IMG/VR virus record: IMGVR_UViG_3300033997_000243
Location: 62,001-126,000 of that record
Length of the DNA stretch: 64,000 nucleotides
Strand: one strand, 5' to 3'
The notes beneath the pieces are model-generated. The model did no database searches. It was not told the origin of the DNA and saw only the letters and a program-made list of their open reading frames with translations. Shown here in pieces: positions 1,049-43,229 of this stretch; positions within the stretch are counted from its first letter, which is position 1; every line of letters starts with the position of its first letter. The translations under genes and the position numbers were made by a program.

Positions 1049-1447
1049 ATGAAAATCAAAGTATTCGTTTCGCAAAGTTCGTACTCTTTGGCCAGACTTA
1101 AAGCATCTGACTCTAAATTCAGACAGTTGGCTGACGACAGATTTACTTCGTCACAAATCAAAAAACTTATGACCAAAGGAACGAAACTTCTTATGGTTGT
1201 TACAGGTGCTTACACACGTAAGGCTGATAACAAAGTAACTCCACAACTAAACAAATATACTCTTGTCATCAAAGAAGTTGAAATAGCTGGCAACGGAAAA
1301 TTAAAAAGAGTGTTGATTGCTCCAGAAGGTAAACATTCAAAAGATGAAATTAAACCTTTATCTGCGGCTGCTTTGGCAAAACTGTTGAACGGCGAAAAGG
1401 CTACTCTTAAATCTAAGAAAGGCACCAAAAGTGCTTCTCTTAAATAA
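1049..1447 (+). CDS. Lys-rich hypothetical protein with shared N-terminal leader (putative internal head protein)
   Basis: SD AAGGA; starts MKIKVFVSQSS; highly basic. Confidence 0.75.
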   Translation: MKIKVFVSQSSYSLARLKASDSKFRQLADDRFTSSQIKKLMTKGTKLLMVVTGAYTRKADNKVTPQLNKYTLVIKEVEIAGNGKLKRVLIAPEGKHSKDEIKPLSAAALAKLLNGEKATLKSKKGTKSASLK

Positions 1448-1465
1448 ATTCAATAGGAAAATCTT

Positions 1466-2293
1466 ATGAAAATTCAAGTTATGTTGTCTGAGAGCGCAGA
1501 TTTAACTGCTGCCCAAGAAAAGAAAATTGTTGTTGGCGGTACTTTTACTTTATATACAATAGTATCAACTAAAAAGACTCCACCAAGACCGAGCATTGGC
1601 TTTATTCCGAAAGAAACTATAGAGCGCTACAAAAAGATGCCTCCTGTTATAACAAAGGCGGCCACTAACTATCGTATAACCGAAGTGAATAGCACTAAAT
1701 CTGGATCAGTTAAATCCATAGTTGCTGTTGCAGAGCGTGACAATTCTCTTACACGTAAGCATCCCGGCAATTTATCAACTTTAACATTAACTAAAGCTAA
1801 ACTTTTGAGTTTAATCGGAAACAAAATAACAAAAGAAGATGTTGGAAGTCAGAGTATAACACTTACTACAAATTCTAAAGATACAACAGCATTCTTTAAC
1901 AAAACTGAGGCAAAAGACAAACAACGCATAAAAGCCTTAGATGAACAAATAGCTAAACTTCAAAAACAACGTGAAGAATTAGCTGGAGTTCAGAAAAAGC
2001 GTAACGATGCTATACACGATGCGGAATCCGCTAAGAAACGTGCTGAACTTAAAGCACAAGGCTATAGTTATTTAGTTGTTATTGAAGGTAAAGAAACAAA
2101 GAAAAAAACTTTAAGTGAAGCCCGTTCAGTCAGACCAAAGATCGGTGAAACCGCTTCGATTTTTGCTGTATTAGCAGGTAAACGCTCAAAGATTCTTACG
2201 TGGTCAGCTAAAGATCCTGTAACCAAAAGAGTCCTTAAAGGATATAATTGGTTCTTTACTTCAGCTGCTGCACAGAAAAAGTTTGATGTATGA
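1466..2293 (+). CDS. Lys-rich hypothetical protein with shared leader; central coiled coil
   Basis: SD AGGA; starts MKIQVMLSESA. Confidence 0.75.
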   Translation: MKIQVMLSESADLTAAQEKKIVVGGTFTLYTIVSTKKTPPRPSIGFIPKETIERYKKMPPVITKAATNYRITEVNSTKSGSVKSIVAVAERDNSLTRKHPGNLSTLTLTKAKLLSLIGNKITKEDVGSQSITLTTNSKDTTAFFNKTEAKDKQRIKALDEQIAKLQKQREELAGVQKKRNDAIHDAESAKKRAELKAQGYSYLVVIEGKETKKKTLSEARSVRPKIGETASIFAVLAGKRSKILTWSAKDPVTKRVLKGYNWFFTSAAAQKKFDV

Positions 2294-2330
2294 ACTTAAT
2301 GCGTTCGATTCCTACTATTAAGGCGGCCCT

Positions 2331-2933
2331 ATGAAAATCAAAGTATTTATTAGCTCTTCAAATAACAAACCTAAAAAAATTGGAGGCTCCAATTGGTTTG
2401 ATGAACTTTCAGACGAAGCTAAAAAAGAATATATTGAAGAACATCCAAATAGTCAGTACGCTAAACATCATATGCGTATGGCAAAACATAAGGAACGTAA
2501 ATCAAGGACTGGCCAATTCGCATCCGGCTTAGATCCTAGATTTGCAGAAGCATCTAAAGGTTTAGATCCTAATCTATTAAAAGAAGTATCTAAACTGGAT
2601 GACGATTTGCAGCAAAGTTTCGCCAAAAGATTTTCTGGCGCTATGGAAGAGTTTGGTTTGGATGCTGATAGTGAAGAAACAACTGCTTCACTGGAAAGTC
2701 ACAAAAATAGAGCGTTGAAAGCAAAGAAAGATGCAGAAAACGCAACTAATCCTATCGCCAAAAAGAAAGCTTTAGCTACTTTTGAGCGTGAACGAGATAA
2801 CTACAAAGAGTTAAAGCTTGCTCACCAGAAAGCTTTGGATGTTTTAAAGACTCCTGGTAAGTTGGATAAATTTAAGAATCAGCTTGGTAGACAGCTTTTA
2901 AGTAAGCTAAGTAAAGTTCAAGCGGAAGAGTAA
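2331..2933 (+). CDS. Basic hypothetical protein with shared leader
   Basis: Starts MKIKVFISSSN; WFDELSDEAKKEYIEEHPNSQYAK resembles a motif recalled from jumbo-phage virion proteins. Confidence 0.75.
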   Translation: MKIKVFISSSNNKPKKIGGSNWFDELSDEAKKEYIEEHPNSQYAKHHMRMAKHKERKSRTGQFASGLDPRFAEASKGLDPNLLKEVSKLDDDLQQSFAKRFSGAMEEFGLDADSEETTASLESHKNRALKAKKDAENATNPIAKKKALATFERERDNYKELKLAHQKALDVLKTPGKLDKFKNQLGRQLLSKLSKVQAEE

Positions 2934-2935
2934 GA

Positions 2936-3094
2936 ATGAAAAAACTCATGGTGGCTAATCTTGCTAAGAAAATTCCTGAAGATCAGCGCAATAAACGTCA
3001 ACAAAAATTAGTTGATGAAATTCCTGAGATTCATGCACGCCTTAAACAAAAAACTGGCCCCTTTGCCTTTATGCGTAAATCGAAGTTTAATTAA
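2936..3094 (+). CDS. Small basic ORF, 52 aa (MKKLMVANLAKK...RKSKFN), absent from the ORF track
   Basis: Translated by hand; fills the gap between 2933 and the terminator at about 3093. Confidence 0.6.
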   Translation: MKKLMVANLAKKIPEDQRNKRQQKLVDEIPEIHARLKQKTGPFAFMRKSKFN

Positions 3095-3113
3095 GGGCTT
3101 CGGCCCTTTTCTT
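3093..3113 (+). terminator. Intrinsic terminator with C(UUCG)G tetraloop
   Basis: AAGGGC-TTCG-GCCCTT followed by TTCTTT. Confidence 0.8.
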
Positions 3114-3124
3114 TAGGTGAGCTT

Positions 3125-3457
3125 ATGAAAATTCTTGTGAGTCTTTGTACAAGTGTAGACAGTATTCAAAAAGAAAATGGTAAACTTGTATACAAGGGAA
3201 TGACTTTCATTGATTTTGATAAACCCATTGAAATAAAGGATAAGCGCTACAAACGTGCGGTATTAGCACGTAAAGGAAATAATTTTAAACTAATAAAGTA
3301 TGGCCATGTTGACTATGAAGATTTCACTACTCACAAAGATCCTGAACGTAGAGAAAATTTTCGCAAAAGATTTCGTGGCATCTTAAAGTCTAATGGTAAG
3401 CCAGCTTATAAAGATAAATGGCAAGCTGCGTATTGGGCATACAACGATCTTTGGTAG
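3125..3457 (+). CDS. Basic protein with leader; DUF5754-like family (recalled from large DNA viruses)
   Basis: MKILVSLCTS leader; YGHVDYEDFTTHKDPERRENFRKRF...AAYWAYNDLW. Confidence 0.65.
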   Translation: MKILVSLCTSVDSIQKENGKLVYKGMTFIDFDKPIEIKDKRYKRAVLARKGNNFKLIKYGHVDYEDFTTHKDPERRENFRKRFRGILKSNGKPAYKDKWQAAYWAYNDLW

Positions 3458-3465
3458 GGAATTCT

Positions 3466-4143
3466 ATGAAGGTTAATATATTAATTTCTGAATCTGCTTC
3501 GACAACTCGTGCATTTAAAGCAAAACTTGCTGAATTAGGTTCCTTATTGTTTGAGTCAGATAATAAATTGATCAGGGAACTAAAGGTAACTAAACCTTTT
3601 GTTAAGACCATTGATGGATTAGCTTATGCTATCCGACTTGCACGTAAATCACACGTTGCTCAAAATAAAGTTGAAGAGTTAGCTACTTTGCTCGGAGTCA
3701 ATCCAGCACATATAACTTCTGCTGTGGATAAAACTGGCTATTGTCTCCACTTTAGCTCTGGTGCTGCTACCAAAGCAATTGCTACATTAAAAAGAATGGC
3801 TAAAGCCAAATCAGTTGGAGCACCTGCTAAAAAATCTAAGACCGCAGACTTCGGTTGGAATGTAGCAATCCAACAAATGACTCGTCAGAAAGAGAATATT
3901 GTTCAAGATAAAGGTCTTGAAGTTGCAGCTAAATGTAAACTGGCTTTTGCTGACCGCATTGATAAGCTTGTTGCTAAAAATACTAAAACACATGATGTCA
4001 GAAGTTTTAGTATGGAAGTTGTTGACTATCCACAAATGACAAGCACTGTCGGCACAGACGAAGTTTATATAACTGTCAAACTAAAGCTGGATCAAAAATC
4101 TCGACCTTCTCAGGGTCGTCCAGTGAAAAAAGAATTCAAGTAA
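3466..4143 (+). CDS. Basic hypothetical protein with shared leader
   Basis: Start moved from 3418 to ATG 3466 (SD AGGGA); begins MKVNILISESA. Confidence 0.75.
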   Translation: MKVNILISESASTTRAFKAKLAELGSLLFESDNKLIRELKVTKPFVKTIDGLAYAIRLARKSHVAQNKVEELATLLGVNPAHITSAVDKTGYCLHFSSGAATKAIATLKRMAKAKSVGAPAKKSKTADFGWNVAIQQMTRQKENIVQDKGLEVAAKCKLAFADRIDKLVAKNTKTHDVRSFSMEVVDYPQMTSTVGTDEVYITVKLKLDQKSRPSQGRPVKKEFK

Positions 4144-4173: not shown

Positions 4174-4200
4174 AAATATTTTAGTTAAAGGAAATCAAAA

Positions 4201-5421
4201 ATGAAAATTCGTGTATTCACATCAACCTCAGCGCGTAAGCGTGATATTGTAGTAAATCAAGTTGGCACCAGTTTTGAAGTGTCTGTTGACGATAAAGTTC
4301 TGGTTAAGTTTACTGGCAAAGCAACACCTGATACTATTACAGAAAAATTGCAAAAGAAAGAATTCAATGGCGCAGAAATCAAACGTGTGTTTGCTCAGAT
4401 TGCTAAGCTTGGTAAAGCTGATTCCCGTGAAGTTAAGGTTAAACCTTCAGCTGCTGATTCAAAAACAAAGAAACAGCTTTTCTCTGATGCAACTGTACGT
4501 TTGGTGGCAAAAGAATTTCCAGAAGCTATAGCTACTTTAGCTCAACTGAATAAAACAGATCGTGCTAAAGCCTATGCCAGATCGCATCATGGCCTTGGTA
4601 TGGGTGTTCGGAATTTTATGCGTTCTAAGACCACAGAAAAAGCAGTGAGAAATCCTGTCACTGCCGACGATATTTGGTCAGAAGTTTTAGATCGTGCAAT
4701 CGAATTGAAACTTTATAAAGATACGGATGCTGATGTTTACCAGTTAGCAAAAATAACTGGTAATGCTGTAAAAGAGTTGGATATGGTTTTGTACAAAGAC
4801 GCAGATTCAGTGAAGAAATTAGGAGCCTCTATTGCACGTAGCTTGAAAAAAGCTTTCGGTGATGGCATGACTATTAAAGCTCGTGTACGTGAGCACTTTA
4901 GTCCGTCACCTAATGTACCTGCACACAGATACAATCACTTTGCTGTTTCCTTACCTATCAATATGATTACTGTAGGCGGCAACAATAAACTAAATATTTA
5001 TGTCGGTACTGGCATTGTAATGATCGAAGAGGATGGGCCGAAATCTACTAAGGTTACTAACCATAAACTGGTGAAAGGAACTAACGCAGAAGTTTTGGAG
5101 GCTATTACCAAGAATCTTAAGATCAAAACCAATACTGTTGAAAAACCTGCGTCAACAGGAAAATTCAATGAAGCAAGTCAATATGTTGTTGATAAATTCG
5201 GCAAAGATCTTAAGGCAAAAGGTATTGACTTAATACCTACACCTGGTGGCATTAGTTTTTATCATCCACGTCGCGGAACCGTTAAAGCACGTTTCGGAAT
5301 CAAAAATGGTAAGATGATGCACATGACTAAGTATAAGGCCAGTTTTGGTGAAACTTTTGACATGAGTAAACCAATTAGTAAAGCTGTTATCAGCAAAATT
5401 GTCGCTCCCTTACTTAAATAA
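4201..5421 (+). CDS. Basic hypothetical protein with shared leader
   Basis: SD AAGGA; starts MKIRVFTSTSA. Confidence 0.8.
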   Translation: MKIRVFTSTSARKRDIVVNQVGTSFEVSVDDKVLVKFTGKATPDTITEKLQKKEFNGAEIKRVFAQIAKLGKADSREVKVKPSAADSKTKKQLFSDATVRLVAKEFPEAIATLAQLNKTDRAKAYARSHHGLGMGVRNFMRSKTTEKAVRNPVTADDIWSEVLDRAIELKLYKDTDADVYQLAKITGNAVKELDMVLYKDADSVKKLGASIARSLKKAFGDGMTIKARVREHFSPSPNVPAHRYNHFAVSLPINMITVGGNNKLNIYVGTGIVMIEEDGPKSTKVTNHKLVKGTNAEVLEAITKNLKIKTNTVEKPASTGKFNEASQYVVDKFGKDLKAKGIDLIPTPGGISFYHPRRGTVKARFGIKNGKMMHMTKYKASFGETFDMSKPISKAVISKIVAPLLK

Positions 5422-5434
5422 TTTTTCCATAGGA

Positions 5435-5603: not shown

Positions 5604-5629
5604 AATAAGGTTTCCACTAAGGAACAAAT

Positions 5630-6286
5630 ATGAAAATTCGTGTATTCATTTCAGAATCAAGTCAAGAAGATGAAGAGTTTCAAAGAATTTGCGCGTTGTA
5701 CCTTGAGCGTCAATCCGTAGTACGTGCTTTAGGTGAAATCGACCGTGTGGTAAACGCCACAACTCAGGACGCAAACGAAATAGAAAGTGATAAAAGCTTT
5801 AATACTCGTAAACGAAATCTTCAGGAAGAGGTTGCAAAGTTTGATCTTGAAATCTCAAATCTCAAACGCAGAATTTTATACGGTACTTCTCCGTGGAAAA
5901 GTAAAGATAGCGAGTGGGTTAAAGAATTTATAGCAAAATGTTCTACCTCACTTATTGCCAATCCTTCACTAATACAAGCGAATAATGAAACCCAGTATAT
6001 AGAAGTAGCTTCAAAACTTCGCAGAGAGTTACTTGATAGTGTTAGAATGATCGCAAACTTTAAAAGCGAAAATATAGCTAATCTGTTATACGCTTGCGCT
6101 AAGTTTTATTTGGATATGTCAAACAGCGGTCAAAGTTCTTTATCTCAAGTTACGTATTCGGCTGCTGTAACCGAATTGCATAAAGTTCTTGAGTTATATG
6201 AACCTATTCTTATTCGTATATACAAACACGGCATTCGTAAAGATTACATGAAAGTGTTTGCTCAGGTTTTCAAGAATTTTGGTTAA
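5630..6286 (+). CDS. Helical hypothetical protein with shared leader
   Basis: SD AAGGA; starts MKIRVFISESS. Confidence 0.8.
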   Translation: MKIRVFISESSQEDEEFQRICALYLERQSVVRALGEIDRVVNATTQDANEIESDKSFNTRKRNLQEEVAKFDLEISNLKRRILYGTSPWKSKDSEWVKEFIAKCSTSLIANPSLIQANNETQYIEVASKLRRELLDSVRMIANFKSENIANLLYACAKFYLDMSNSGQSSLSQVTYSAAVTELHKVLELYEPILIRIYKHGIRKDYMKVFAQVFKNFG

Positions 6287-7230: not shown

Positions 7231-8931
7231 ATGAAAAAGCCGATTAAAGCCAAGGTTACGCCTGTGCATGATAAAAATGCAGCCAAGCCAAAAGCTAAGA
7301 AACCAGTTGTAATTCCGAATAGCATTAAGTATGCTGCGGAAAAATCGAAATCTCGTGTTGTGTTTGCTGTTCCAGGCCGTTACATTTTAAAAAATCGTCG
7401 TGCAACCTTCGCTATTGTGCGGATTGCAGATGACGTTAAAATGAGTCCAAGCGTAGCCACTAAAGTTTTCAAGGTTACTGCAAGTGATATGGATCTTACA
7501 CAAGAACAAATCTTTGCACTTGAGCCAATTGAAATGGATTCTTTGAGTGCTGCACCTGGTGCGAAAGTTTCTGGTCTTGACTCAAAGATGGGCAAGAAAA
7601 CACATGCACCAAATACCTTATCAAAAGGTTGGTGGGTTTTCCGTAAAGGTAATGACGGTAAAGTTGCAAAAGCTTTTGCTGGTGGCCGCATCAGTGGTCG
7701 TCGTATCTTATCTTTAATCGATCCTTCTCAAGCACCTAAGCCAAAAACTGAAGTGATTGACGAAACCAAAAAAGCTCCGGCCAAGAAAACTGGTGCTGAA
7801 TTAAAAGCAGCTGGTCAAATCAAAGCTTTGCAGACTGAGTTCAAAAAACTTGGTGGCGAACTTACTGCTGGCAAAGAACGCTTAACCACTTTACAACGTG
7901 CAACATCTAAAATTGCTTTGAAAGAAAAGCTGAAGAAAATAATTGCCCGTCGTAAAGAAATTTCTGCTGAGATTAAAGCTTTGAAATCTGGTGAACCTGC
8001 ACCAAAAATTAATCCTTCAGCTAAGGCTCCTGCCGTTAAGAAACCTGCTGCTACAGGAAAGATCACTAAGTCTGATATTAGTGCGTTACCTAAACGCCAA
8101 CAAACAGCTTATATGAATCTGAAGGAAAAAGGCACGGCTATTGTTCAGGCTATTAAAGCACTGAGAGAAAAGTTGACTAAGTTGAAAACAAAACCAGCTA
8201 AAGCCAAAGTAGAAGCTGAGATTGCTAAGCAAACAAAACTTCGTGATAAGGTTGTAAAAGCTTTAGCTGACTTCCATGAAAAAATTCGTAATGGAAGTGC
8301 AGGTCAGGTAGTTCCTGCTCATAAACAAAAACCTTCAAAATCACCTGAAGCTGGTAAAGCAGTTCCTCCTGCTAAAAAACCAAAGGCTGAGCCAGCATCT
8401 AAAGCTCCGGCAGCTAAGCCAAAAGCTACGGTTCCAAATGCTGAAGTAAAACAGGCCAAACAAGAAGTTAAAAAGTTGGATCAAGAAATTGATCGTGACG
8501 TTCAAACAATAGATCGTTTGAAAGACATGCTTGAAAAAACAAAAGACGTTAATCGTCGTAAAAAACTTCAGGCCAGCATTGATGGTCTTAACAAGCGTAT
8601 TGATTTAAAAGCTCGTAAGCAAAGTGGTGCGAATAGCGTACTGCAATCAAAAAGCAGTGAGCAAATTTACTTCCCTACTTACTCAGCTGCCGTTCAACAT
8701 GCCGTCGATGGTTTAGCTTCAAAAGGATTAGCCTACGAAGCTGCCGATTTTGAACGCATCGTCACACATGGAACAGCAAAACCTGCTGCTGGTAAAACAA
8801 CTCGCTTTGTGTTGCCAATTAAATCTAAAGGCGGCTTGATCAGTAAGAGCGCTAAAGGTTTAACTGTTGCTGTTTATCATGCAGATGATCGCACTCAAAA
8901 TCCATTTGAATTAACTCACTACGTTTCTTGA
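7231..8931 (+). CDS. Large Lys/Ala/Pro-rich (histone H1-like composition) putative DNA-condensing head protein; paralog of 8964
   Basis: SD AAGGA before ATG 7231; PAKK/PAAK repeats, coiled coils; N-terminal ~150 aa align with 8964. Confidence 0.7.
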   Translation: MKKPIKAKVTPVHDKNAAKPKAKKPVVIPNSIKYAAEKSKSRVVFAVPGRYILKNRRATFAIVRIADDVKMSPSVATKVFKVTASDMDLTQEQIFALEPIEMDSLSAAPGAKVSGLDSKMGKKTHAPNTLSKGWWVFRKGNDGKVAKAFAGGRISGRRILSLIDPSQAPKPKTEVIDETKKAPAKKTGAELKAAGQIKALQTEFKKLGGELTAGKERLTTLQRATSKIALKEKLKKIIARRKEISAEIKALKSGEPAPKINPSAKAPAVKKPAATGKITKSDISALPKRQQTAYMNLKEKGTAIVQAIKALREKLTKLKTKPAKAKVEAEIAKQTKLRDKVVKALADFHEKIRNGSAGQVVPAHKQKPSKSPEAGKAVPPAKKPKAEPASKAPAAKPKATVPNAEVKQAKQEVKKLDQEIDRDVQTIDRLKDMLEKTKDVNRRKKLQASIDGLNKRIDLKARKQSGANSVLQSKSSEQIYFPTYSAAVQHAVDGLASKGLAYEAADFERIVTHGTAKPAAGKTTRFVLPIKSKGGLISKSAKGLTVAVYHADDRTQNPFELTHYVS

Positions 8932-8963: not shown

Positions 8964-10007
8964 ATGATTATCTCGTTGAGCGTTTCGGCAAAGAAGCCAG
9001 CCGTGCCGAACAGTGTTCAGTATGTTTTGGAACAAGCTAAAGGCCGTTTAGTTTTTGCGGAATCAGGACGTTATGTTTTCAAAACAAGACAAGGCGATTT
9101 TGCTTTAGCCCGTTTCAAAGACGAAACTAAATTTTCACCATCTATGAATGTGAAAATGTTTAGCAATAAAATGGTTTCTAAATCGGAAGATTTCAATGTA
9201 AGTACAGAAGCTTACTCTGAACCTGAAGATGAATTGCAAGCAGAAGCGGCAGCTAAAGCACCTGGTGCAAAAAATAATGCAGCCTCTACAAAGATGGGCG
9301 TTAAAAAACGTGCTCCTGGAATGATGGCTCCAGGTTGGTGGCTTTTCCATAAAGACGGCGGTAAGGTTACTCGTCAGTATGTTGGCCCACGTTTAAGCGG
9401 AAGAAAATTACTTTCTCTTGTTAAGTCTGAGAGCCAATCTAATAATGGTAAGCCTGATACAAAAGAAACCAAACATGATATTGGAGACAATACTCCGGTT
9501 AAAGTATCTAAAGTAAGTGAACTTTATGTTCCAACAAAAGATCCTGTTAATGACGCAATCAAAGTATGGAAAGCCTTGGACAAAAAACTTGAGTCCGAAG
9601 GTATTCCAACAAAAGAAACTTTAGCTGCTGTTGATGCTGCTATAGCTAAAATGCAAAAGATGTACGATGTTTTAACTTCACCTGAAAACAAAAGCAAACA
9701 TTTAGGTGACAGTATTGAACTTAACTACTACCTGAAAGACCTGAAATCTATAAGATCTGAAATGGCTAAAAAACCAAAATTAGATGAAGCAAATAAAAAA
9801 ACGCTTGCTTTATTTATGAAGGCTAAAGATGATGGTCACGGAAACATTCAAGTAAATTTTGGTGAAGAAGCAAAAGCAAAAGCAGCTAAAACTTTAATGT
9901 CAAGCTTAGGTATTTTAGCTTACACTACAGGAATGAATAGAAGATACGTCAATATTGGCAAACCTGGACATAAAAAGCTTAGAGCAATTATGAAGCAATT
10001 GTCTTAA
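8964..10007 (+). CDS. Basic hypothetical protein with leader; paralog of 7231
   Basis: Starts MIISLSVSA; shares PNS..Y.....K.R.VFA..GRY and APGAK..KMG..GWW.F.K..GKV blocks with 7231. Confidence 0.8.
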   Translation: MIISLSVSAKKPAVPNSVQYVLEQAKGRLVFAESGRYVFKTRQGDFALARFKDETKFSPSMNVKMFSNKMVSKSEDFNVSTEAYSEPEDELQAEAAAKAPGAKNNAASTKMGVKKRAPGMMAPGWWLFHKDGGKVTRQYVGPRLSGRKLLSLVKSESQSNNGKPDTKETKHDIGDNTPVKVSKVSELYVPTKDPVNDAIKVWKALDKKLESEGIPTKETLAAVDAAIAKMQKMYDVLTSPENKSKHLGDSIELNYYLKDLKSIRSEMAKKPKLDEANKKTLALFMKAKDDGHGNIQVNFGEEAKAKAAKTLMSSLGILAYTTGMNRRYVNIGKPGHKKLRAIMKQLS

Positions 10008-13252: not shown

Positions 13253-14347
13253 ATGAAAACCAATTTACAAGTCGGCGCTTCTTATCAACTGAAGAACGGC
13301 GCACCTTTGCACGATCTTCGTTTTGCCGGACAAGGTATGGCTGCACTTTCATCTAACGGTGAAATTAACGCATCAAGCAATGCAGATCTGTTAAAACAAA
13401 TTGGCCAACTTTTACAATCAGTATCAAGCGGTACTGTTGTTCAAGCTGCAACGCCTGATTCTTTCCTGTCATTATCTGCCGAGCAGAAACGTGATATTTT
13501 AGTTGCCGCAAAAGCATGTCCTAATAAGTGGGCTGCTTTAGGTGCTCACATTGCTGCTGACGTTCGTGAACAAGCAAGTCGTCAAGGTTTTTCACGCAAT
13601 CTGTGTGTGATCAATAACCTGAAGCAAGGTGAAACTCAAAAAGTTCCAATGCCTCGCCATCAAGCTAAAGCCGTTTTAGCTACTGGCCCAACTTCAATTT
13701 CTTACCAAATGATGCGTGATAAATATTTCACGCCACCAGAGTTTGAATTGAAAGCTGCTGTTCGCGTGAACAAACTGGATTTGGGTCAAGCGACTCACGA
13801 TCTGTTAGACCACGCTTACAACGATGCTGTTGAAGGTATGATCACTGCTGCTGACCGCGTGTGGAAACGTGCTGCTGATGCAACTGTAGGTAAAGCAAAT
13901 ACTTTAGCTGCTTTCGCTGGTGCATTTACTCCTGCCGTTATCGCTCGTGCTTCAACACAAATTCGTGATTGGAACTTACCAGTAAGTCGCGCTGTTATCG
14001 CAAACAGTTTTTGGGAAGATATTCAATCTGAAGGTGCCTGGGCCAATACACTGACTCCAGTATCTCAGTACGAATTAGTTATGACTGGCCGTGTTGCAAC
14101 TATCTTCGGTCTGGAATTAACTACTGACGGTTTCCGTCCTGAAAACCAACGTGTTCTGTCTCGCGGTGAAGCGTACATTGTTGCTGATAATGAATATCAC
14201 GCAACTTTAGGTTCTCGCGGTGGCATTGAATCTACTCCGACCGATGGTGCAAACCAAGGCGATACAACTAAGGGCTGGTTACTGTCAGAGGTTATGTCTC
14301 TGATAATTCCAAATACTCGCTCTGTAGTTAAAATGCAAAAGCTGTAA
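13253..14347 (+). CDS. Major capsid protein (HK97 fold)
   Basis: Start moved to ATG 13253 (SD GGAG); SRQGFSRNL..L.QG...P, ATGPT...FTPPEF, AADRVWK and TG.V.TIFG.EL.TDGFR motifs recalled from PaBG/Y3-type jumbo MCPs; position. Confidence 0.85.
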   Translation: MKTNLQVGASYQLKNGAPLHDLRFAGQGMAALSSNGEINASSNADLLKQIGQLLQSVSSGTVVQAATPDSFLSLSAEQKRDILVAAKACPNKWAALGAHIAADVREQASRQGFSRNLCVINNLKQGETQKVPMPRHQAKAVLATGPTSISYQMMRDKYFTPPEFELKAAVRVNKLDLGQATHDLLDHAYNDAVEGMITAADRVWKRAADATVGKANTLAAFAGAFTPAVIARASTQIRDWNLPVSRAVIANSFWEDIQSEGAWANTLTPVSQYELVMTGRVATIFGLELTTDGFRPENQRVLSRGEAYIVADNEYHATLGSRGGIESTPTDGANQGDTTKGWLLSEVMSLIIPNTRSVVKMQKL

Positions 14348-17946: not shown

Positions 17947-18276
17947 ATGAAAATTTTAGTGAGTTTGTCTGTTGGTTATGAGGACATAGGAAGCACGAAA
18001 CCTGTCTTAAGACTTCACCGTCCTAAAAGACGCTTTGGGCCTCGTAGAAAACTTCCGAAACCTTTTAAACGCTTGGACATTCTAAAACGCAAGTTAAGTA
18101 ACATCAGAGCGCAAATAAAACAACGCTTGAATGCAACAACTTTCCGCTTAGGTGATCCTAAAAAACTATCTAAAAAGAAATCTGAAACAATTTCGCTTTA
18201 TCTACAGTACAAAAGATTGAAGCAACAGATTGAGAAGATGGAACAGATTCAAAAAACAAAGCCTCGGCTTATGTGA
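17947..18276 (+). CDS. Very basic (R/K-rich) small protein with shared leader
   Basis: Start moved from 17821 to ATG 17947; begins MKILVSLSVG. Confidence 0.7.
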   Translation: MKILVSLSVGYEDIGSTKPVLRLHRPKRRFGPRRKLPKPFKRLDILKRKLSNIRAQIKQRLNATTFRLGDPKKLSKKKSETISLYLQYKRLKQQIEKMEQIQKTKPRLM

Positions 18277-29984: not shown

Positions 29985-30860
29985 ATGAAAATCGAAAGTT
30001 TGGTAAGTCTGAATGCAGGTAACACTTATTTAGCTGCTGATGGTTTGGCTAATCTGCCAAACATTTTGGCTGTACGTAAAGACATTGAATCTTATTTACG
30101 TAACATGAAGCCAATCTCTACCATCAAAAAATCGCGTGATGGTTTTTCCGTGAGTGTTGTTGCTCCGGTTAAAATGCGTAAAGAGGCAGTAACCTTAAGT
30201 GCTGTTATCAAGCCGCATACAGCTGACGGTAAAGTTAAGATCGAAGGCGAAGCTGGTAAGTTCACATTAAACTTTTTGTGTGAAGATAAAGCCACTGCTG
30301 AAAAAGCTGTTGCCGCTTTTGGCAAATCAAGTGTTGTTCCTGCACCAATGGGATATTACACTGTTCCGAAACGTAGCAAAGCCATGCAGTATAGTGCGGC
30401 TCGCGCTAAAGCCAAAGAACCAAATTACATGAAGAAACGGGCAATCGCAGTTTCTTTGCGTAGCAAAATGACTGAGACAGCAACTCAAATTCTTCCTATT
30501 TATGCTAACGGCGTTTTGTCTGCCGCGCTGGAAAAGAAAATGAAAGCTGCTGCTTCTGCACTTAACAGTCACATCAAAAAAGTTCCTGCGACTAAAGAAG
30601 CTGCTGGAAAAGTTGCGGATAAAAATCGCGCAGCCAAAGCAAAAGAATATGGCCTTCTGGCGAAAGAAGTTGTCAAGATGCTGACAGAAGCCGGTATCAA
30701 AACTTCTAACATCGTGTTAGGTAAATCTATTTCAGGCCAGACGTTGTATGTTAAATTGCCAAGTGGCAAAGTAATGACTGTAGGCTTGAGCACTATGACT
30801 AACTTCAACACAGCTAAAAAAGCTGCTGCTGAAGCTTACACAGAAGATGAACTGGAATAA
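29985..30860 (+). CDS. Lys/Ala-rich putative internal head/DNA-binding protein with leader variant
   Basis: SD AAGGA; starts MKIESLVSLNA; own promoter and terminator; strong codon bias. Confidence 0.75.
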   Translation: MKIESLVSLNAGNTYLAADGLANLPNILAVRKDIESYLRNMKPISTIKKSRDGFSVSVVAPVKMRKEAVTLSAVIKPHTADGKVKIEGEAGKFTLNFLCEDKATAEKAVAAFGKSSVVPAPMGYYTVPKRSKAMQYSAARAKAKEPNYMKKRAIAVSLRSKMTETATQILPIYANGVLSAALEKKMKAAASALNSHIKKVPATKEAAGKVADKNRAAKAKEYGLLAKEVVKMLTEAGIKTSNIVLGKSISGQTLYVKLPSGKVMTVGLSTMTNFNTAKKAAAEAYTEDELE

Positions 30861-30913: not shown

Positions 30914-31339
30914 ATGATGAATATTCTAATACCATTAAAACGCTTTCTTTCCATTAGTAGTGTTGAACCTCGTTCGCTTGATATTTCATCTTTACTTACA
31001 CGCGCTGTTCTCTTAATTAAAGATCGCAGACTCTTAGCCAGTGAACGTGACTCACGAGTTAAAGCGCTTGCACTTTGCGTCATTGAAATGCAAAATATTA
31101 ATGACGCAAAAACAAAGCTTGTTGTGCTGGAAACAGAATCTGGCGATAACATAAGAGCAATCATTGTTCTTGGTACTCAAATTCTTTATGATCCTGCTGA
31201 GAAATTCAGACGTACTCAAATTTACGATCAAAATTCTAGCATTATTTATCGTGCAGGGAAAACAGATATAAAGGCTGAGTATTTTACTTACGTTTCCTAT
31301 ACTCACAAAGCTATTATGTCACGAATTGAGAAGGCTTGA
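30914..31339 (+). CDS. Hypothetical protein (leader-like FLSISS)
   Basis: SD GGAG; 141 aa. Confidence 0.65.
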   Translation: MMNILIPLKRFLSISSVEPRSLDISSLLTRAVLLIKDRRLLASERDSRVKALALCVIEMQNINDAKTKLVVLETESGDNIRAIIVLGTQILYDPAEKFRRTQIYDQNSSIIYRAGKTDIKAEYFTYVSYTHKAIMSRIEKA

Positions 31340-33407: not shown

Positions 33408-33790
33408 ATCTTGACGCTAATAAGTTTCTATCCGATTGGACAAGAAACAAAACAAATTTAAGTATTATTGCTGTGAAATTTCTTGACGAAGTTAAACCCA
33501 ATTCTGTTCTCAAAGGTTTAAAATCTAAAGCACTGAGATTTGTGCCTGTTCTTCCAAATAAAAATGCACAAATAGAAAAACTTGTCAAGAAGTCAGCTAC
33601 AGTTTTTGCTACACAAGGTAAGCCAAAACCTTTAGGTGAGATATTTAATACGCTCGATGCTGTTTCAGAAAAATTTCCAAAAGAGAGCGTATTTGAGGTA
33701 ATGGTTTTTATTCAAGGCTTCGACGATTCCACGGATGCCGAAACTTACGAGTACGTGTTTACTCTAATGATTAAAAAGGTTGAGAAATGA
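33398..33790 (+). CDS. Hypothetical protein
   Basis: Coupled ORF, 130 aa. Confidence 0.6.
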   Translation: MRIDLDANKFLSDWTRNKTNLSIIAVKFLDEVKPNSVLKGLKSKALRFVPVLPNKNAQIEKLVKKSATVFATQGKPKPLGEIFNTLDAVSEKFPKESVFEVMVFIQGFDDSTDAETYEYVFTLMIKKVEK

Positions 33791-34335
33791 GAATATTAAT
33801 TAGTCTATCCAGTAAGGCTATTCGTATTGAGCAGTCGTTCGGGCCTCTGCATCTTAAAGTACAACGTGCTGACAGAAATATGTATGCAGTAAGTTGGACA
33901 AATAAAATGAAAAATGCTACTGCAAACTTTGCTAAGATGGGACAAAAGAATTATCTTGTGAGTTCAGCTGGCCCTAATCTTCCAGAAACTCAATTAGATA
34001 CGAAAGATTTAAAGCAAGGTCTGCTAATGTTCTTTGGCAATTGCAGTATTTTAAAAGTTGCTGATGAACAAGTATTGGCCGCACGTAAATGGATAGGTGA
34101 AATCATTAAAGATTACGAAGGCGTACATTCTTTGAATATTCGTATTGCTGTTCGTGGTCGTGAGCAAGATAACTTGCACCTACCTGTTACATACGGGCCA
34201 GCTGGTCAAAAGAAGAAGGGTATTTTGCTTTATATTCTGCCGCTCAGCGAGAAATGTCGAGTCATGGTATTGAACGAAGATGGTTCCAAAGGAAATGTCT
34301 TAGAAATGCCTAAAGATCAAATTTGGATAGATTAA
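33787..34335 (+). CDS. Hypothetical protein with shared leader
   Basis: Starts MRILISLSS. Confidence 0.75.
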   Translation: MRILISLSSKAIRIEQSFGPLHLKVQRADRNMYAVSWTNKMKNATANFAKMGQKNYLVSSAGPNLPETQLDTKDLKQGLLMFFGNCSILKVADEQVLAARKWIGEIIKDYEGVHSLNIRIAVRGREQDNLHLPVTYGPAGQKKKGILLYILPLSEKCRVMVLNEDGSKGNVLEMPKDQIWID

Positions 34336-37974: not shown

Positions 37975-39642
37975 ATGATTATTTCAATTTCTGCTGTGAG
38001 TAAAAACTCTACAGAATCATTCATCAAACTTGTAGCCAGTTCAATAATGGTGTGTTTGATTGAAGAACCTTTGGGCGCTAAAGTTAAATCTAAGATCCGT
38101 AAGTGGAATTCAGACGCCGAAGAATTTTTGAAAAGATTTCGTATTCCAAGATCAACTTTCAATCCTATAGTAAATGGCTGCTTAAACGACAATGCCGATA
38201 TGGATTGGGATCTTGATGCTTTAATTCGTGTTCTGAAAGAACGTGAAAAAGCTGGTATGCTTACAAAAGAGTTGGATCTTACCAAAGACCATATTGATCT
38301 TTTGAAGTATATGATGGGTATTGTACTTCGTGGGAGTGACGCAAGTTTAAAAAATCTTACTCGTCATATTAGTAAACTTGGTGATCCTGATCTAACAGCT
38401 GTTTTCCTTCACGAAGATGCTGAGCAAAGTAACCAACAAGATTTAGTTGCAGAACTTAATAAATTCTGCCGTAAAATCTTCGGTAAGCCTGAAGCCGACT
38501 TAACTGTCGAAGATAAAAATTCGTTACGTGACAAAAAACCTGAACAGTATAAAGTTTTCCTGAAATTAATGCGGGACATTAACGAAGGGACAAAGCAAGC
38601 AACATTAAGCTTTGTCCGACAAAGTGGTGAAAAGCTTGTTAAGGCTACAGAGTTAGTTCGCTATCTAAAGCAGAACAAAATTCGCAGCAAAGTGCCTGAA
38701 GGATTCAATGGTTACGTTGATGAAAACGGTGCTTATTACAACACGAACAAAGTAAAACTTGATGGTGCTATAACAGGCCGCTTAGAAGCAAATCCTAAGT
38801 ACGATCCTGAATTGGATAACACTTACGTTTTCCTTCACTATCCACTGTTTGGTACTGGGCAGCCTCAACGTATTTACACAGTTGAGTATCGCAAAGAGAA
38901 GGCGGGTAAAAAGTTTAACACTGTTGATGCACTAATAAAAGATCTTCCGGCTGCCCGTAAAAAATGGTTGCATGAATTAAAGACAGGTCATTATGAAGAT
39001 GCTGACACTGTATCTGCTTTAATTCTTGAACTTATTTACGAAACCTCTGCTCGTATTGGTACTGCTGGTCAAAGTGGTCAAGGCATTAGCACGTTGGTAT
39101 GTAAAAACTATACTTCTCGTGGAACCGGATATTTCACATTGAATTATTTGGGCAAGAGTGGCGTTAAACAAATTCATAAAATACATACTAATAAGCCTGA
39201 AGGCAAAATGATGAAGGGGTTATTAGATAGTTTGGTTGAAGGTAAAAAGCCAAATGATTTAATAATGACTGCTCAATTCGGTCGTGCTGTTAAGCATGTG
39301 AATGGTACTTACGTAAATAAATATTTGCGTTCGTTAGGTGTAGATCAAAGCATTACACTTCACAAATTCCGACATGCCCGTGGAACCATTGTTGCAGGTG
39401 CTGTTCTTGATAAAGCTCCGGCTTTCCGTGGTAAATCTGAAGCCGAAATAAATAAATGGTTTATTGAGGCCATGAAAAAAGTTGGTGAAGAATTAGGTCA
39501 TGTTAACGGTGAAAAAGTAACTGCTACTACTGCAATTCAAAACTATATTGATCCAAACTTAATTAAAGAATGGTTCGAGAAAGTTGGTGCTCGTCCGAAC
39601 AGCACTATTCAAAAAGCAATCAACAAAGTAGCTAAGGATTAA
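37975..39642 (+). CDS. DNA topoisomerase IB-like tyrosine transesterase with N-terminal extension and leader
   Basis: ETSARIG (R), G.STL, YLGKSG (K), HKFRH (R), LGH (H), NYIDP (Tyr); starts MIISISAVS. Confidence 0.8.
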   Translation: MIISISAVSKNSTESFIKLVASSIMVCLIEEPLGAKVKSKIRKWNSDAEEFLKRFRIPRSTFNPIVNGCLNDNADMDWDLDALIRVLKEREKAGMLTKELDLTKDHIDLLKYMMGIVLRGSDASLKNLTRHISKLGDPDLTAVFLHEDAEQSNQQDLVAELNKFCRKIFGKPEADLTVEDKNSLRDKKPEQYKVFLKLMRDINEGTKQATLSFVRQSGEKLVKATELVRYLKQNKIRSKVPEGFNGYVDENGAYYNTNKVKLDGAITGRLEANPKYDPELDNTYVFLHYPLFGTGQPQRIYTVEYRKEKAGKKFNTVDALIKDLPAARKKWLHELKTGHYEDADTVSALILELIYETSARIGTAGQSGQGISTLVCKNYTSRGTGYFTLNYLGKSGVKQIHKIHTNKPEGKMMKGLLDSLVEGKKPNDLIMTAQFGRAVKHVNGTYVNKYLRSLGVDQSITLHKFRHARGTIVAGAVLDKAPAFRGKSEAEINKWFIEAMKKVGEELGHVNGEKVTATTAIQNYIDPNLIKEWFEKVGARPNSTIQKAINKVAKD

Positions 39643-40846: not shown

Positions 40847-41341
40847 ATGAAAATTTTAATCAGTTTGTCTGGCGAGAAATTTTATCGTGGAATAAATGGT
40901 AAATTTTCTACTGACTACCAAAACAAAAGCCATATAATTTGGGTCACATTAAATGCCAAATATGCTTTGCAGTATGGCGATCATTTAATGGAATATGACA
41001 TAAACTTAGGCCAAGGATTTAATTTTGGCTTTCGTACACTTGATGCTCAAGTGACCTTTAGTGAAATCATTTCCAGAATAAAGCAAGGTATCCTAGATTC
41101 CTATAAAAAATTTAACCTTGTATCAAAAGATAAAGCGCTGACACTGTACAATGAGTTAAATTCATTAAATCATGGTGGCCATAAAAAAGTTTGGGAGTGG
41201 TATCAGACTGAGCCAAAACTTGCTGAATTGTTATTGAAGTCTGGATACACTCATATAGATGCACTTGAAGGAAAATACAACGACATAAGAACTGTTGGTA
41301 TTCTTAAAAAGAGCATTATAAAGGGAAACAAATCATTATGA
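40847..41341 (+). CDS. ADP-ribosyltransferase-fold (ART-PolyVal-like) protein with shared leader
   Basis: MKILISLSG leader; FYRG, W.T.N..YA.QYG.....Y.I, L.K.GY..I. Confidence 0.55.
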   Translation: MKILISLSGEKFYRGINGKFSTDYQNKSHIIWVTLNAKYALQYGDHLMEYDINLGQGFNFGFRTLDAQVTFSEIISRIKQGILDSYKKFNLVSKDKALTLYNELNSLNHGGHKKVWEWYQTEPKLAELLLKSGYTHIDALEGKYNDIRTVGILKKSIIKGNKSL

Positions 41342-41601
41342 AAAAGAAGCAACTTTTGCTATCGGAATCCGCTAATGCAAAACAAATAGCTGCACTAACT
41401 ACAACAGCTCCTGAAACACTGCAACTTATAAATGATGCGATTAAGGCAAGTGATAAAAAATTACGCGCTCTTAAGAGTCGAGGCACACAAGCCAGTGAAA
41501 TAATGGCTCATGAAATTGTTGGAAGGATTGATGCACTTAAGATAGTCAAAGAATCTTTGTTGGGTAACAGTGTAGATCTTAAGATGCTTACAAAACAATA
41601 A
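41338..41601 (+). CDS. Small helical protein with leader variant
   Basis: Starts MKKKQLLLSESA. Confidence 0.7.
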   Translation: MKKKQLLLSESANAKQIAALTTTAPETLQLINDAIKASDKKLRALKSRGTQASEIMAHEIVGRIDALKIVKESLLGNSVDLKMLTKQ

Positions 41602-41615
41602 GGCTGGAGTATAAG

Positions 41616-42053
41616 ATGGCTCGAATACAATACGGTATTAGTGATTCTTTTAACGGGTTTCGTGCCAGAAATTTCGTTCTGGACATGCCAAGTTCAACAA
41701 AAGGCATGTTTGAATCTTATGCAAGATCTGTTGCTGAATTCTACTATGATGACGAAATGCTTAAGGTTGAACAACAGGCTAAAAAAGAAGTAATTCGTCG
41801 ATACAGATTGGATGATGAAAGCATATTACTTCAAGACATCGATGACACTATCGCTGGATTGATAGCCGGATTGAATGTAAGTAAAACAAATATGCAAGTT
41901 GCTTTAGCGAGCATTAAAGCAAAAATTGGTGAATACAATCACTTTAATTATATAGGTGTTGAATATCTTGTAGATCGTGGTCTATTCACTAAAAACGGTG
42001 ACGGTTACAAATTTCAATACAGATACAAAACAGCATTCATTGAGTTTATCTGA
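41616..42053 (+). CDS. Hypothetical protein, paralog of 42068
   Basis: SD GGAG; aligns with the next ORF. Confidence 0.7.
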   Translation: MARIQYGISDSFNGFRARNFVLDMPSSTKGMFESYARSVAEFYYDDEMLKVEQQAKKEVIRRYRLDDESILLQDIDDTIAGLIAGLNVSKTNMQVALASIKAKIGEYNHFNYIGVEYLVDRGLFTKNGDGYKFQYRYKTAFIEFI

Positions 42054-42067
42054 GCAGAGGAACAAAC

Positions 42068-42523
42068 ATGGCTATAACAACTGCTCGTGATGTAGTTAAC
42101 GAAAACAATGGAAAGGCACAGCGATACGATGCAATTGAACTTTCCGAAAGCGATAAGCCTAGATTGCAGAGATTTATCGATGCTGAGGCTAAACGCTGGT
42201 ACACGGATTTCAGAACAGATGAATTAGGAAGAATTAACAGAGAACTTAGAGATAAGTTTGGACTGCCTGGTGATGAAGGGCTGCGTCTTTCAATATCAAA
42301 TAGAATAGAATCACTTAATATAAATCAAACGGCAGCAAACCAGAACAACGTAATAGCCTTATCTGATTTACGTGAATATTTACGAAATGTCATTGATGGC
42401 GAGGAAGATGATCCACGTTACGCGAGAATTCGAGATTTAATCGATAACGGTAAAATAACTAAACGTAATAAAAGATTCTTCCTTGAAGGTGAGGGCAAAC
42501 GCATGACGTTTGTATTCATATGA
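42068..42523 (+). CDS. Hypothetical protein, paralog of 41616
   Basis: SD GAGG; internal ELSESD. Confidence 0.7.
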   Translation: MAITTARDVVNENNGKAQRYDAIELSESDKPRLQRFIDAEAKRWYTDFRTDELGRINRELRDKFGLPGDEGLRLSISNRIESLNINQTAANQNNVIALSDLREYLRNVIDGEEDDPRYARIRDLIDNGKITKRNKRFFLEGEGKRMTFVFI

Positions 42524-42840
42524 AAATAAATTTTAAAAATGTCCCATCAGTTGCCATTGATTCTAGGTTTCAAAAAGTATTTAATGCTTATAACAAAGAA
42601 ACTCGTGAATACATGCACTATCTACATAGCGTTGCCGAGAATCCAAGTCTACAGCACGAAAGACCTGCTATAAATACCAACAGGCTTCACAGAATAAGTG
42701 AACTTATTAAGGCAGAACTTAGTAAACGTATTAACATGGATGGTCTTGATTTTTACGAAAACTACGTATGCCGTTTTGATGGAAACAAAAACGCTTTTGT
42801 TCAACCAATTTATAGAATTGTTTTTAAGGACATGAAATGA
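42520..42840 (+). CDS. Hypothetical protein
   Basis: ATGA coupling on both sides. Confidence 0.65.
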   Translation: MKINFKNVPSVAIDSRFQKVFNAYNKETREYMHYLHSVAENPSLQHERPAINTNRLHRISELIKAELSKRINMDGLDFYENYVCRFDGNKNAFVQPIYRIVFKDMK

Positions 42841-43229
42841 AAGTTAAAGTATTTGTAGCTAAGGCCACCAATCTGAGAAATAAACCGTTAAGTGAATACT
42901 CACAGCGCGAAGAGTTACGGAAATTTTGGCCGTTGCGTGATGCTATTGTTGTAGGGAACATGCAGGAAAAGCAACTGATAAATATGATTCGAGATCTTAT
43001 TGACTGGTACTACGATGCTAAAGATGAACGTGACGAAAATTTAGCATTAGCTTGTGTTGAGTTAATGCGTACTCGTGGAGTAACCAGACGCTTACCTCAA
43101 ATTGCGGCAGTAAATGCAGAATTCAACAATTCACCTACTTACAAACATTGGTCAAAGATAACACTGGCAGCCAGTATAGCCGAAAATAAAATCATTTTAG
43201 CTAATCGTAAACCAGAGGACAGATTTTAA
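42837..43229 (+). CDS. Hypothetical protein with leader variant
   Basis: Starts MKVKVFVAKAT. Confidence 0.7.
   Translation: MKVKVFVAKATNLRNKPLSEYSQREELRKFWPLRDAIVVGNMQEKQLINMIRDLIDWYYDAKDERDENLALACVELMRTRGVTRRLPQIAAVNAEFNNSPTYKHWSKITLAASIAENKIILANRKPEDRF

What the first reader, a model, noticed from the sequence alone, without database searches (positions are those of the whole stretch)
1049..43229. A shared 8-11 aa N-terminal leader on about 15 unrelated proteins: candidate capsid-targeting/cargo-loading system
Seen in the sequence: unrelated + strand ORFs begin with near-identical leaders. They are MKIKVFVSQSS (1049), MKIQVMLSESA (1466), MKIKVFISSSN (2331), MKILVSLCTS (3125), MKVNILISESA (3466), MKIRVFTSTSA (4201), MKIRVFISESS (5630), MIISLSVSA (8964), MKILVSLSVG (17947), MLIVVSAT (18283), MKIESLVSLNA (29985), MRILISLSS (33787), MIISISAVS (37975), MKILISLSG (40847), MKKKQLLLSESA (41338) and MKVKVFVAKAT (42837, degenerate). 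The consensus is M-K/R-hydrophobic beta strand-S-x-S-small, after which the sequences diverge completely. The serines use both TCN and AGY codons, so selection acts on the protein and not on a DNA repeat. Sheath, tube, baseplate and the whole - strand arm lack the motif. Established: T4 internal proteins carry a ~10-aa capsid targeting sequence that directs them into the prohead and is removed by the prohead protease. Inference: this is an independent, much larger address-tag system for loading and ejecting a protein payload, and the tag might be reusable for packaging foreign proteins. The leader is too short and polar to be a Sec signal peptide.
Basis: partly seen in the sequence, partly recalled or inferred. 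Interest (0 to 1): 0.92.

Follow-up and report, generated by a model that had tools for sequence, protein, structure and literature searches.

The report
Shared N-terminal leader on jumbo-phage proteins
About twenty unrelated late proteins of this uncultivated jumbo phage start with the same 6-15-residue leader ending in hydrophobic-Ser-x-Ser, which is most likely a tag read and cut off by the phage's T4-gp21-like head protease, as the T4 capsid targeting sequence is, and many related phages have it too.

Summary
All 16 leaders are at the stated coordinates. Thirteen of 54 + arm proteins have [ILVFMY]-S-x-S starting at residues 2-14, against 1.4 expected (p=3e-9). The - arm has 1 of 33 and a T4 control 1 of 57. 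The proteins share nothing beyond the leader, and the Ser codons vary.

New findings:
- The window opens on the last codons of a head maturation protease gene. Its predicted fold is closest to T4 gp21.
- The tagged genes cluster around that gene, and four more lie just upstream of the window.
- Orthologues at 30-70% identity keep the leader, but its length varies. Some homologues lack it and start where the leader would end.
- 80 loci from phages with this protease family show the same enrichment. The modal leader is 8 residues: M-K-[IL]-x-[IVL]-S-x-S, then A or S.
- A small-x-small motif is conserved near the protease's own N-terminus and in the N-terminal region of the capsid protein. In phage G, which has a homologous protease, the capsid protein is cut after V-A-L-A.
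- In an AlphaFold model of the tagged topoisomerase-IB-like protein, the leader lies outside the fold.

Verdict: a CTS-like propeptide system, a new variant of a known kind. Neither cleavage nor packaging is shown.

The parts
3..119 (+). Last 38 codons and stop of the head maturation protease gene. The whole gene is L004 9207-10001 (264 aa). Its own N-terminus carries K-F-V-S-S-S then F-D.
   Evidence: tblastn with AD1 gp142; own contig fetched; phrog_18299, E=6e-88; Foldseek top hit is T4 gp21 5jbl_B, prob 0.96
119..1039 (+). 306-aa protein with an H-E-L-A-H motif, the conserved neighbour of the protease gene. It has an internal I-V-S-E-S|A at residues 88-92 that is not conserved in homologues.
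1049..1447 (+). Tagged gene, 132 aa. Leader MKIKVFVSQS (bases 1049-1078).
1466..2293 (+). Tagged gene, 275 aa. Leader MKIQVMLSES (1466-1495). Orthologues keep a leader (MKVFISHS, MKINVMISES).
2331..2933 (+). Tagged gene, 200 aa. Leader MKIKVFISSS (2331-2360). A distant homologue has no leader and starts near the mature domain.
3125..3457 (+). Tagged gene, 110 aa, with DUF5754 and a match to part of phrog_220 (minor head protein and DNA pilot). Leader MKILVSLC (variant).
3466..4143 (+). Tagged gene, 225 aa. Leader MKVNILISES (3466-3495).
4201..5421 (+). Tagged gene, 406 aa. Leader MKIRVFTSTS (T at P4).
5630..6286 (+). Tagged gene, 218 aa. Leader MKIRVFISES.
7231..8931 (+). 566-aa paralogue of 8964 without a leader. 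It starts MKKPIK, where 8964 reads MIISLSVSA-KKPAV.
8964..10007 (+). Tagged gene, 347 aa. Leader MIISLS(VS). The NCTB orthologues start MKIISIS and MKIVSIS.
13253..14347 (+). Major capsid protein, 364 aa. Candidate maturation sites are Q-S-V-S|S (residues 55-58, bases 13415-13426; the small-x-small pattern is conserved in all 35 homologues) and L-S-L-S|A (residues 72-75, bases 13466-13477; not conserved in the family alignment).
   Evidence: phrog_2522; PaBG capsid protein loses about 20% of its mass
17947..18276 (+). Tagged gene, 109 aa, lying between the tube genes. Leader MKILVSLS.
18283..18963 (+). Tagged gene, 226 aa, with a KMPT-N domain. Leader MLIVVSAT (variant). Orthologues start MLISLSAA (NCTB) and MLILLSES (AD1).
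29985..30860 (+). Tagged gene, 291 aa. Leader MKIESLVSLN (variant).
30914..31339 (+). The 15-residue leader ends F-L-S-I-S.
33787..34335 (+). Tagged gene, 182 aa. Leader MRILISLS.
37975..39642 (+). Tagged topoisomerase-IB-like protein, 555 aa. Leader MIISIS. Residues 1-6 are disordered in the model and the first helix starts at residue 10.
   Evidence: Pfam Topoisom_I, E=1e-15; Foldseek to topoisomerase IB structures, prob 1.00; alignment A1; AlphaFold model
40847..41341 (+). Tagged gene, 164 aa. Leader MKILISLS. The NCTB orthologue starts MLISISLG.
41338..41601 (+). Tagged gene, 87 aa. Leader MKKKQLLLSES.
41616..42053 (+). Possible extra tagged gene, 145 aa. N-terminus MARIQYGISDS. Weak case.
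42837..43229 (+). Tagged gene, 130 aa. Leader MKVKVFVAKA (A-x-A variant).

Best explanation
The leader is a short N-terminal propeptide that works like the T4 capsid targeting sequence. Its 6-15 residues have the modal form M-K-hydrophobic-x-hydrophobic-S-x-S, a pattern of alternating hydrophobic and polar residues that suggests an amphipathic beta strand. The strand would let an otherwise unrelated protein dock onto the prohead core or onto the head protease itself while the shell closes around it. The gp21-like protease would then cut after the second small residue (hydrophobic-S/A-x-S/A, cut, then usually A or S), the same rule it would use on itself and on the capsid protein. The short peptide would leave, and the mature proteins would stay in the head and presumably enter the host with the DNA. 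These include a topoisomerase IB, KMPT-N proteins and about 15 proteins of unknown function.

Shown: the motif, its N-terminal and late-gene specificity, its modularity, its conservation across the clade, its linkage to the protease gene, and the fold of the protease. Inferred: cleavage at this site, loading into the capsid, and ejection.
For: (1) N-terminal enrichment with p=3e-9. Internal occurrences are at chance, and the - arm and T4 controls are negative.
(2) The proteins are not paralogues and there is no DNA repeat.
(3) Orthologues at 30-70% identity keep S-x-S-A, while the residues before it vary from 2 to 8 (A1). Leaderless homologues start at the predicted cut (7231 against 8964; L041 against 2331).
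(4) The window starts inside the protease gene. Four more tagged genes, the protease among them, lie in the 10 kb upstream, whereas the tail-like genes further upstream are untagged.
(5) The protease matches phrog_18299 at E=6e-88. Its AlphaFold model has pLDDT 86 and its top Foldseek hit is T4 gp21, prob 0.96.
(6) In 80 loci around homologous proteases the strict N-terminal motif exceeds expectation in 69, for example 11 against 0.7 and 9 against 0.7. There are 181 distinct leaders with a modal length of 8. Positions 2, 3 and 5 differ from untagged N-termini with p of 1e-12 to 1e-19.
(7) Small-x-small followed by F-D/G is conserved near the protease N-terminus, and small-hydrophobic-small followed by [SNA]-G is conserved in all 35 capsid protein homologues. 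The PaBG capsid protein loses about 20% of its mass (PMC7412058). Phage G gp19 is a homologue of the protease, and its capsid protein goes from 282 to 255 aa by N-terminal sequencing, which places the cut after V-A-L-A (PMC5646251).
(8) The leader of the topoisomerase-IB-like protein has pLDDT below 50 and lies outside the fold.
(9) The cargo is plausible: topoisomerase IB, KMPT-N and a piece of a DNA-pilot protein.
Against: No experiment shows cleavage or packaging for any tagged protein in this clade. The PaBG gel study lists only 14 abundant bands and no N-termini.

In the conserved capsid protein site and the protease site, the hydrophobic residue sits at P5 or P2 rather than at P4 as in the leaders, so the shared rule is only small-x-small. 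The second capsid protein site (L-S-L-S|A) is not conserved in the family alignment. The internal site in the 119-1039 protein is not conserved.

Genes 17947 and 18283 lie between tail tube genes. A leader of 6-8 residues is shorter than the 10-20 residues given for the T4 sequences. Phage G has a related protease but a different shared leader. The Foldseek match to gp21 is weak in E-value (1e-2) and TM-score (0.39 and 0.56).
Confidence: 0.5

Rival explanations
1. Processing only. The leader is cut off by the head protease but does not target anything. Loading depends on other parts of each protein, and the propeptide merely blocks the N-terminus or delays activity until the head has closed.
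For: The best-conserved part is the small-x-small site shared with the protease and the capsid protein. Leaderless paralogues exist (7231), which could mean that loading does not need the leader.
Against: A bare cleavage site would not need a fixed modal length of 8, nor conserved K at position 2 and hydrophobic residues at positions 3 and 5. It is hard to see what six to eight residues outside the fold could inhibit in some 20 unrelated proteins.
Confidence: 0.17
2. Uncleaved docking strand. The N-terminal strand stays on the mature protein and adds to a beta sheet of a common partner in the virion, in the head interior, the neck or the tail. It would be a shared assembly adaptor and not a propeptide.
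For: The alternating hydrophobic and polar pattern suits an edge strand. Residues 12-16 of the protease, which carry the motif, are modelled as a strand. Two tagged genes lie in the tail block.
Against: The motif ends with the same small-x-small rule as the sequenced phage G capsid protein cut. The distance from the Met varies from 2 to 17 residues in orthologues while S-x-S-A stays, which fits a cut site better than a fixed structural strand. Sheath, tube and baseplate proteins lack it.
Confidence: 0.13
3. Expression signal. The shared start (AUG AAA AUU ...) reflects selection for efficient translation initiation of late genes and not a protein function.
For: M-K-I is common in AT-rich genomes. 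AAA as the second codon is known to favour initiation (own knowledge).
Against: The defining S-x-S uses both TCN and AGY codons, and third positions vary. Highly expressed late genes (capsid protein, sheath, tube) lack the leader. The motif persists in loci of 32-57% GC.
Confidence: 0.04
4. Export or membrane signal (Sec, lipoprotein or similar) cut by host signal peptidase, which also prefers small residues at -3 and -1.
For: The end of the leader obeys the -3,-1 rule.
Against: The hydrophobic stretch is only 3-5 residues long and is interrupted by polar or charged residues. The whole leader is 6-10 residues long. The carriers include a DNA topoisomerase. The motif also occurs inside the capsid protein and at the protease N-terminus.
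Confidence: 0.03

Closest known systems
T4 capsid targeting sequence (CTS) of the internal proteins, Alt and gp24, removed by prohead protease gp21
   Same: A short N-terminal peptide shared by unrelated proteins and ending at the protease's cut site. The protease has the same fold class. The carriers are enzymes expected to travel with the DNA. The role of the T4 sequence is as described in PMC5694885.
   Different: P1 is Ser or Ala and not Glu, with no sequence similarity. The leader is shorter (modal 8 against 10-20 residues). There are about 20 carriers per genome against a handful. It is found across a large clade of uncultivated phages. The function is untested here.
phiKZ / 201phi2-1 / SPN3US head protein propeptides
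   Same: Jumbo phages in which many head and ejection proteins are trimmed by a gp21-like protease that also cuts itself.
   Different: Those cuts follow S/A/G-x-E or A-x-E, and most of those propeptides exceed 100 residues. Here the peptide is very short and uniform and ends in S-x-S.
Herpesvirus assemblin cutting scaffold at (V/L/I)-x-A then S (own knowledge)
   Same: The same protease superfamily as gp21, with a preference for a small P1 residue and an aliphatic residue upstream.
   Different: Assemblin acts on the C-terminal region of the scaffold, not on N-terminal tags of many cargo proteins.
Signal peptidase I substrates (-3,-1 rule)
   Same: Small residues at -3 and -1 after a hydrophobic segment.
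   Different: There is no real h-region, the carriers are cytoplasmic and DNA-binding, and the motif is linked to a head protease gene.
Encapsulin cargo-loading peptides
   Same: A short peptide that addresses unrelated cargo to the inside of an HK97-fold shell.
   Different: Those peptides are usually C-terminal, bind the shell protein directly and are not removed (own knowledge).

Membership tests
T4-type capsid targeting sequence system | A short N-terminal peptide shared by several otherwise unrelated late proteins | tested here: met
T4-type capsid targeting sequence system | The phage encodes a gp21-type (assemblin-fold) prohead protease | tested here: met
   phrog_18299, E=6e-88. Foldseek top hit 5jbl_B, prob 0.96, E=1e-2. 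Invariant H131 and S188 lie 57 residues apart; T4 H85 and S140 lie 55 apart. The correspondence of these residues is inferred.
T4-type capsid targeting sequence system | The leader ends at the motif that the protease also uses on the capsid protein and on itself | tested here: inconclusive
   Small-x-small is conserved in the protease and the capsid protein. The phage G cut is V-A-L-A|Q. The register of the hydrophobic residue differs, and no cut has been mapped in this clade.
T4-type capsid targeting sequence system | The leader is removed from the protein found in mature heads | not testable with these tools
   Needs virion N-terminal peptide mapping.
T4-type capsid targeting sequence system | The leader is necessary and sufficient for encapsidation | not testable with these tools
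   Needs fusion and deletion experiments.
T4-type capsid targeting sequence system | Cleavage after Glu in L/I-x-E | tested here: not met
   P1 is Ser in all 181 leaders by the definition of the pattern. Glu appears only at P2, in 14%.
phiKZ-type head propeptides | Cut after S/A/G-x-E, and propeptides mostly longer than 100 residues | tested here: not met
Sec signal peptide | Hydrophobic core of at least 7 uninterrupted residues | tested here: not met
   3-5 hydrophobic residues, interrupted
Paralogous gene family with a shared N-terminal domain | Similarity that continues beyond the leader | tested here: not met
   best E-value 0.19 after trimming 12 residues. The exception is the pair 7231 and 8964, which are paralogues, one of them without a leader.

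The most novel reading that the evidence does not exclude
The 8-residue strand is a self-sufficient, portable loading address that binds by strand addition in the substrate groove of the prohead protease. The protease would then double as the cargo receptor. In that case the set of tagged genes can be read straight from sequence as the injected proteome (topoisomerase IB, KMPT-N proteins, about 15 unknowns per genome) for more than a thousand lineages of uncultivated jumbo phages.
Probability: 0.2. Interest if true: 0.8.

Novelty: new variant of a known kind. Interest (0 to 1): 0.62.

Why it matters
If the leader is a loading tag, a regular expression would predict which proteins jumbo phages of this large clade carry in their heads and inject. 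The protease family has 2811 representatives at 50% identity. Most of the predicted proteins are of unknown function, and some are likely counter-defence or take-over factors.

It would also define the specificity of a second branch of gp21-like proteases. That bears on head assembly and on host sensors that detect prohead protease activity (PMC12991175).

An 8-residue tag would be the shortest known capsid address and a handy tool for packaging proteins into large capsids in laboratory hosts.

Tried and rejected
- Near-identical DNA search in the phage collection found nothing. The nearest cultured relative is only about 46% identical in the sheath protein.
- Paralogy was rejected, and so was a DNA-level repeat.
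- Pfam gave nothing for the protease, and sequence search of solved structures gave nothing either. Only the fold search linked it to gp21.
- The internal motif in the 119-1039 protein was checked in homologues and is not conserved.
- Internal motif enrichment in late proteins was tested and rejected.
- Eight literature searches found no description of this leader and no mapped cleavage site for the PaBG/Lu11/NCTB/AD1 group. The AD1 paper has no virion proteomics, and the jumbo-phage survey by Iyer et al. has no occurrence of the related terms searched for.
- The 6wkk alignment first looked like a mature N-terminus at window capsid protein residue 71. The deposited chain turned out to be nearly full length, so the cut was placed from the published mature length instead.

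Full report
What the window is. It is a 64-kb piece of an uncultivated jumbo myophage, IMG/VR contig of 319,518 bp, with about 37% GC. The + arm, bases 1-44146, holds late genes. These include a major capsid protein at 13253 (phrog_2522), the sheath at 15692, tube proteins at 17343 and 19369, and baseplate genes from 24083 to 29124. The - arm holds other functions, among them GroEL and GroES. The nearest cultured relatives are phage NCTB (sheath 46% identical), then Lu11, PaBG and the Dickeya and Erwinia Alexandravirus phages. This is the 'Lupandier group' of PMC7412058.

The observation. All 16 quoted N-termini are correct. They reduce to one pattern: Met, then 1-7 residues rich in K and aliphatic residues, then hydrophobic-S-x-S, then usually A or S. 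Eleven fit this strictly, five are variants, and two more carriers were missed (30914, 41616).
- Thirteen of 54 + arm proteins have the strict motif starting at residues 2-14, against 1.39 expected (p=3e-9).
- The - arm has one of 33.
- Internal occurrences match shuffles.
- The T4 structural region shows no enrichment.
- After removal of 12 residues the proteins show no mutual similarity.
- The codons for the conserved serines differ.

Link to the head protease. Bases 3-119 are the end of a gene homologous to the annotated head maturation protease of AD1. I fetched the same contig upstream. The complete protease has 264 aa and matches phrog_18299 at E=6e-88. It has no Pfam or PDB sequence match. 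An AlphaFold model from 52 homologues has pLDDT 86. Its best Foldseek hit, by a wide margin, is the T4 prohead protease gp21 (prob 0.96, E=1e-2).

Three more leader-bearing genes lie in the 10 kb before the window. The protease itself carries K-F-V-S-S-S followed by F-D at residues 12-19. Tail-like genes further upstream have no leader. In AD1 the order is protease, gp141, gp140, gp139, capsid protein. In this phage the block of tagged genes at 1049-10007 is inserted after the gp141 homologue (119-1039).

Conservation and modularity. NCTB orthologues of 8964, 17947, 18283, 37975 and 40847 also start with such leaders, and so do AD1 gp132 and PaBG gp84. In the alignment of 16 homologues of the topoisomerase-IB-like protein, S-x-S-A-V-S-K is conserved. 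The residues before it vary from M-Y to an 8-residue extension. Leaders come and go among homologues. Gene 7231 is a paralogue of 8964 that starts at the point where the leader of 8964 ends, and a distant homologue of 2331 starts at the mature domain. In the AlphaFold model of the topoisomerase-like protein, residues 1-6 have pLDDT below 50 and the first helix starts at residue 10. The fold is confirmed as topoisomerase IB.

A clade-wide trait. I used the protease alignment to fetch 80 loci of about 20 kb from viral contigs. The strict N-terminal motif exceeds its expectation in 69 of them, up to 11 against 0.7. Together they give 181 distinct leaders with a modal length of 8 and the consensus M-K-[IL]-x-[IVL]-S-[L/E/I]-S followed by A (35%) or S. 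Compared with untagged proteins of the same loci, tagged ones have more K/R at position 2 (48% against 22%) and more hydrophobic residues at positions 3 and 5 (64% and 70% against 33% and 34%). The leader is therefore more than a cut site. The protease family has 2811 representatives at 50% identity. Its cultured members reach phiRSL1, Burkholderia BCSR5 and Xanthomonas PhiXhv-16.

Is the end of the leader a protease site? Three lines of evidence suggest so.
- Near the N-terminus of the protease family there is a conserved hydrophobic-x-[SA]-x-[SA]-F-[DGS], placed after an extension of 3-35 residues.
- All 35 capsid protein homologues have [SA]-hydrophobic-[SA] followed by [SNA]-G at about residue 58. 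That lies between an N-terminal helix and the part that aligns with the HK97-type protein of phage G. This phage has a second site, L-S-L-S|A, at residue 75.
- The PaBG capsid protein loses about 20% of its mass on maturation. Phage G gp19 is a homologue of this protease. The phage G capsid protein matures from 282 to 255 residues by N-terminal sequencing, which puts the cut after V-A-L-A.
The common rule is small-x-small with a nearby hydrophobic residue. It resembles the specificity of assemblin (own knowledge) and not the Glu specificity of T4 or phiKZ. No cut has been mapped in the PaBG-like group, so this step is inferred.

Mechanism proposed. The leader tags proteins for the prohead and is removed by the gp21-like protease, as the T4 capsid targeting sequence is. 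The carriers fit cargo: a topoisomerase IB, three KMPT-N proteins and a fragment related to a DNA-pilot protein. KMPT-N is a Pfam family named for an N-terminal domain fused to KTSC and metallopeptidase domains. I take it to be typical of injected polyvalent proteins, the class discussed in the paper read. I put the full reading at about 0.5, cleavage alone at about 0.65. The rivals are processing without targeting, an uncleaved docking strand, an expression signal and an export signal, in that order.

Limits. There is no proteomic or N-terminal evidence for any tagged protein. The register of the hydrophobic residue differs between the leaders and the capsid protein and protease sites. Two carriers lie among tail genes. 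The Foldseek match is modest. Gene starts in the 80 loci come from my own simple caller. It reproduced the curated starts in the window, but it will make errors elsewhere.

Novelty. The principle is known from T4 and, with long propeptides, from phiKZ-like phages. This leader, its motif, its size and its spread are not described in any paper I could find. I rate it a new variant of a known kind.

Noticed in passing
L095 (Bacillus phage G 8000-40000), genes gp9, gp10, gp12, gp13, gp17, gp20, gp38: Phage G has a homologue of the same protease (gp19). Seven of 49 proteins in its head region share a different N-terminal leader, [KR]-L-[IK]-[KS] within the first 12 residues (for example MKRLIKK), against 0.22 expected. 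I defined the motif after seeing it.
   Followed up: partly
window 32303-32758 (+): A 151-aa protein in the late arm matches Pfam Acb1 (anti-CBASS) at E=1e-27. PHROGs calls it an RNA ligase. It has no leader.
   Followed up: partly
window 44241-46164 (-): Phage-encoded chaperonin pair: Cpn60 (535 aa, E=3e-72) and Cpn10 (101 aa, E=2e-22).
   Followed up: partly
window 10136-12469 (+): The 777-aa protein between the tagged block and the capsid protein gene is labelled 'ATPase' in PHROGs and RefSeq, but it has no Pfam ATPase match. Its N-terminal third holds two copies of a roughly 50-residue unit, acidic linkers and a Cys cluster. Its role in the head module is unknown.
   Followed up: no
window 34345-37140 (+): A 931-aa protein without a leader carries an internal KMPT-N domain (residues 348-411), like the tagged 18283, and has a weak Tad6-like match.
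   Followed up: no
L001 5998-6780 (NCTB BN7874_230); Burkholderia phage BCSR5 139585-140196: Genes annotated as 'endolysin' in these records are homologues of the head maturation protease. The annotation is probably wrong.
   Followed up: partly
NCTB record 9071-9514 (+), locus L007: An FHA-domain protein outside the structural arm of NCTB also starts with MNILISLS, so not every carrier is encoded in the late module.
   Followed up: no
window 6297-7115 (+): A 272-aa protein without an N-terminal leader has I-V-S-V-S and L-I-S-R-S at residues 63-77. Its first 60 or so residues resemble small 88-aa proteins of NCTB and L020. It is possibly a longer propeptide.
   Followed up: no
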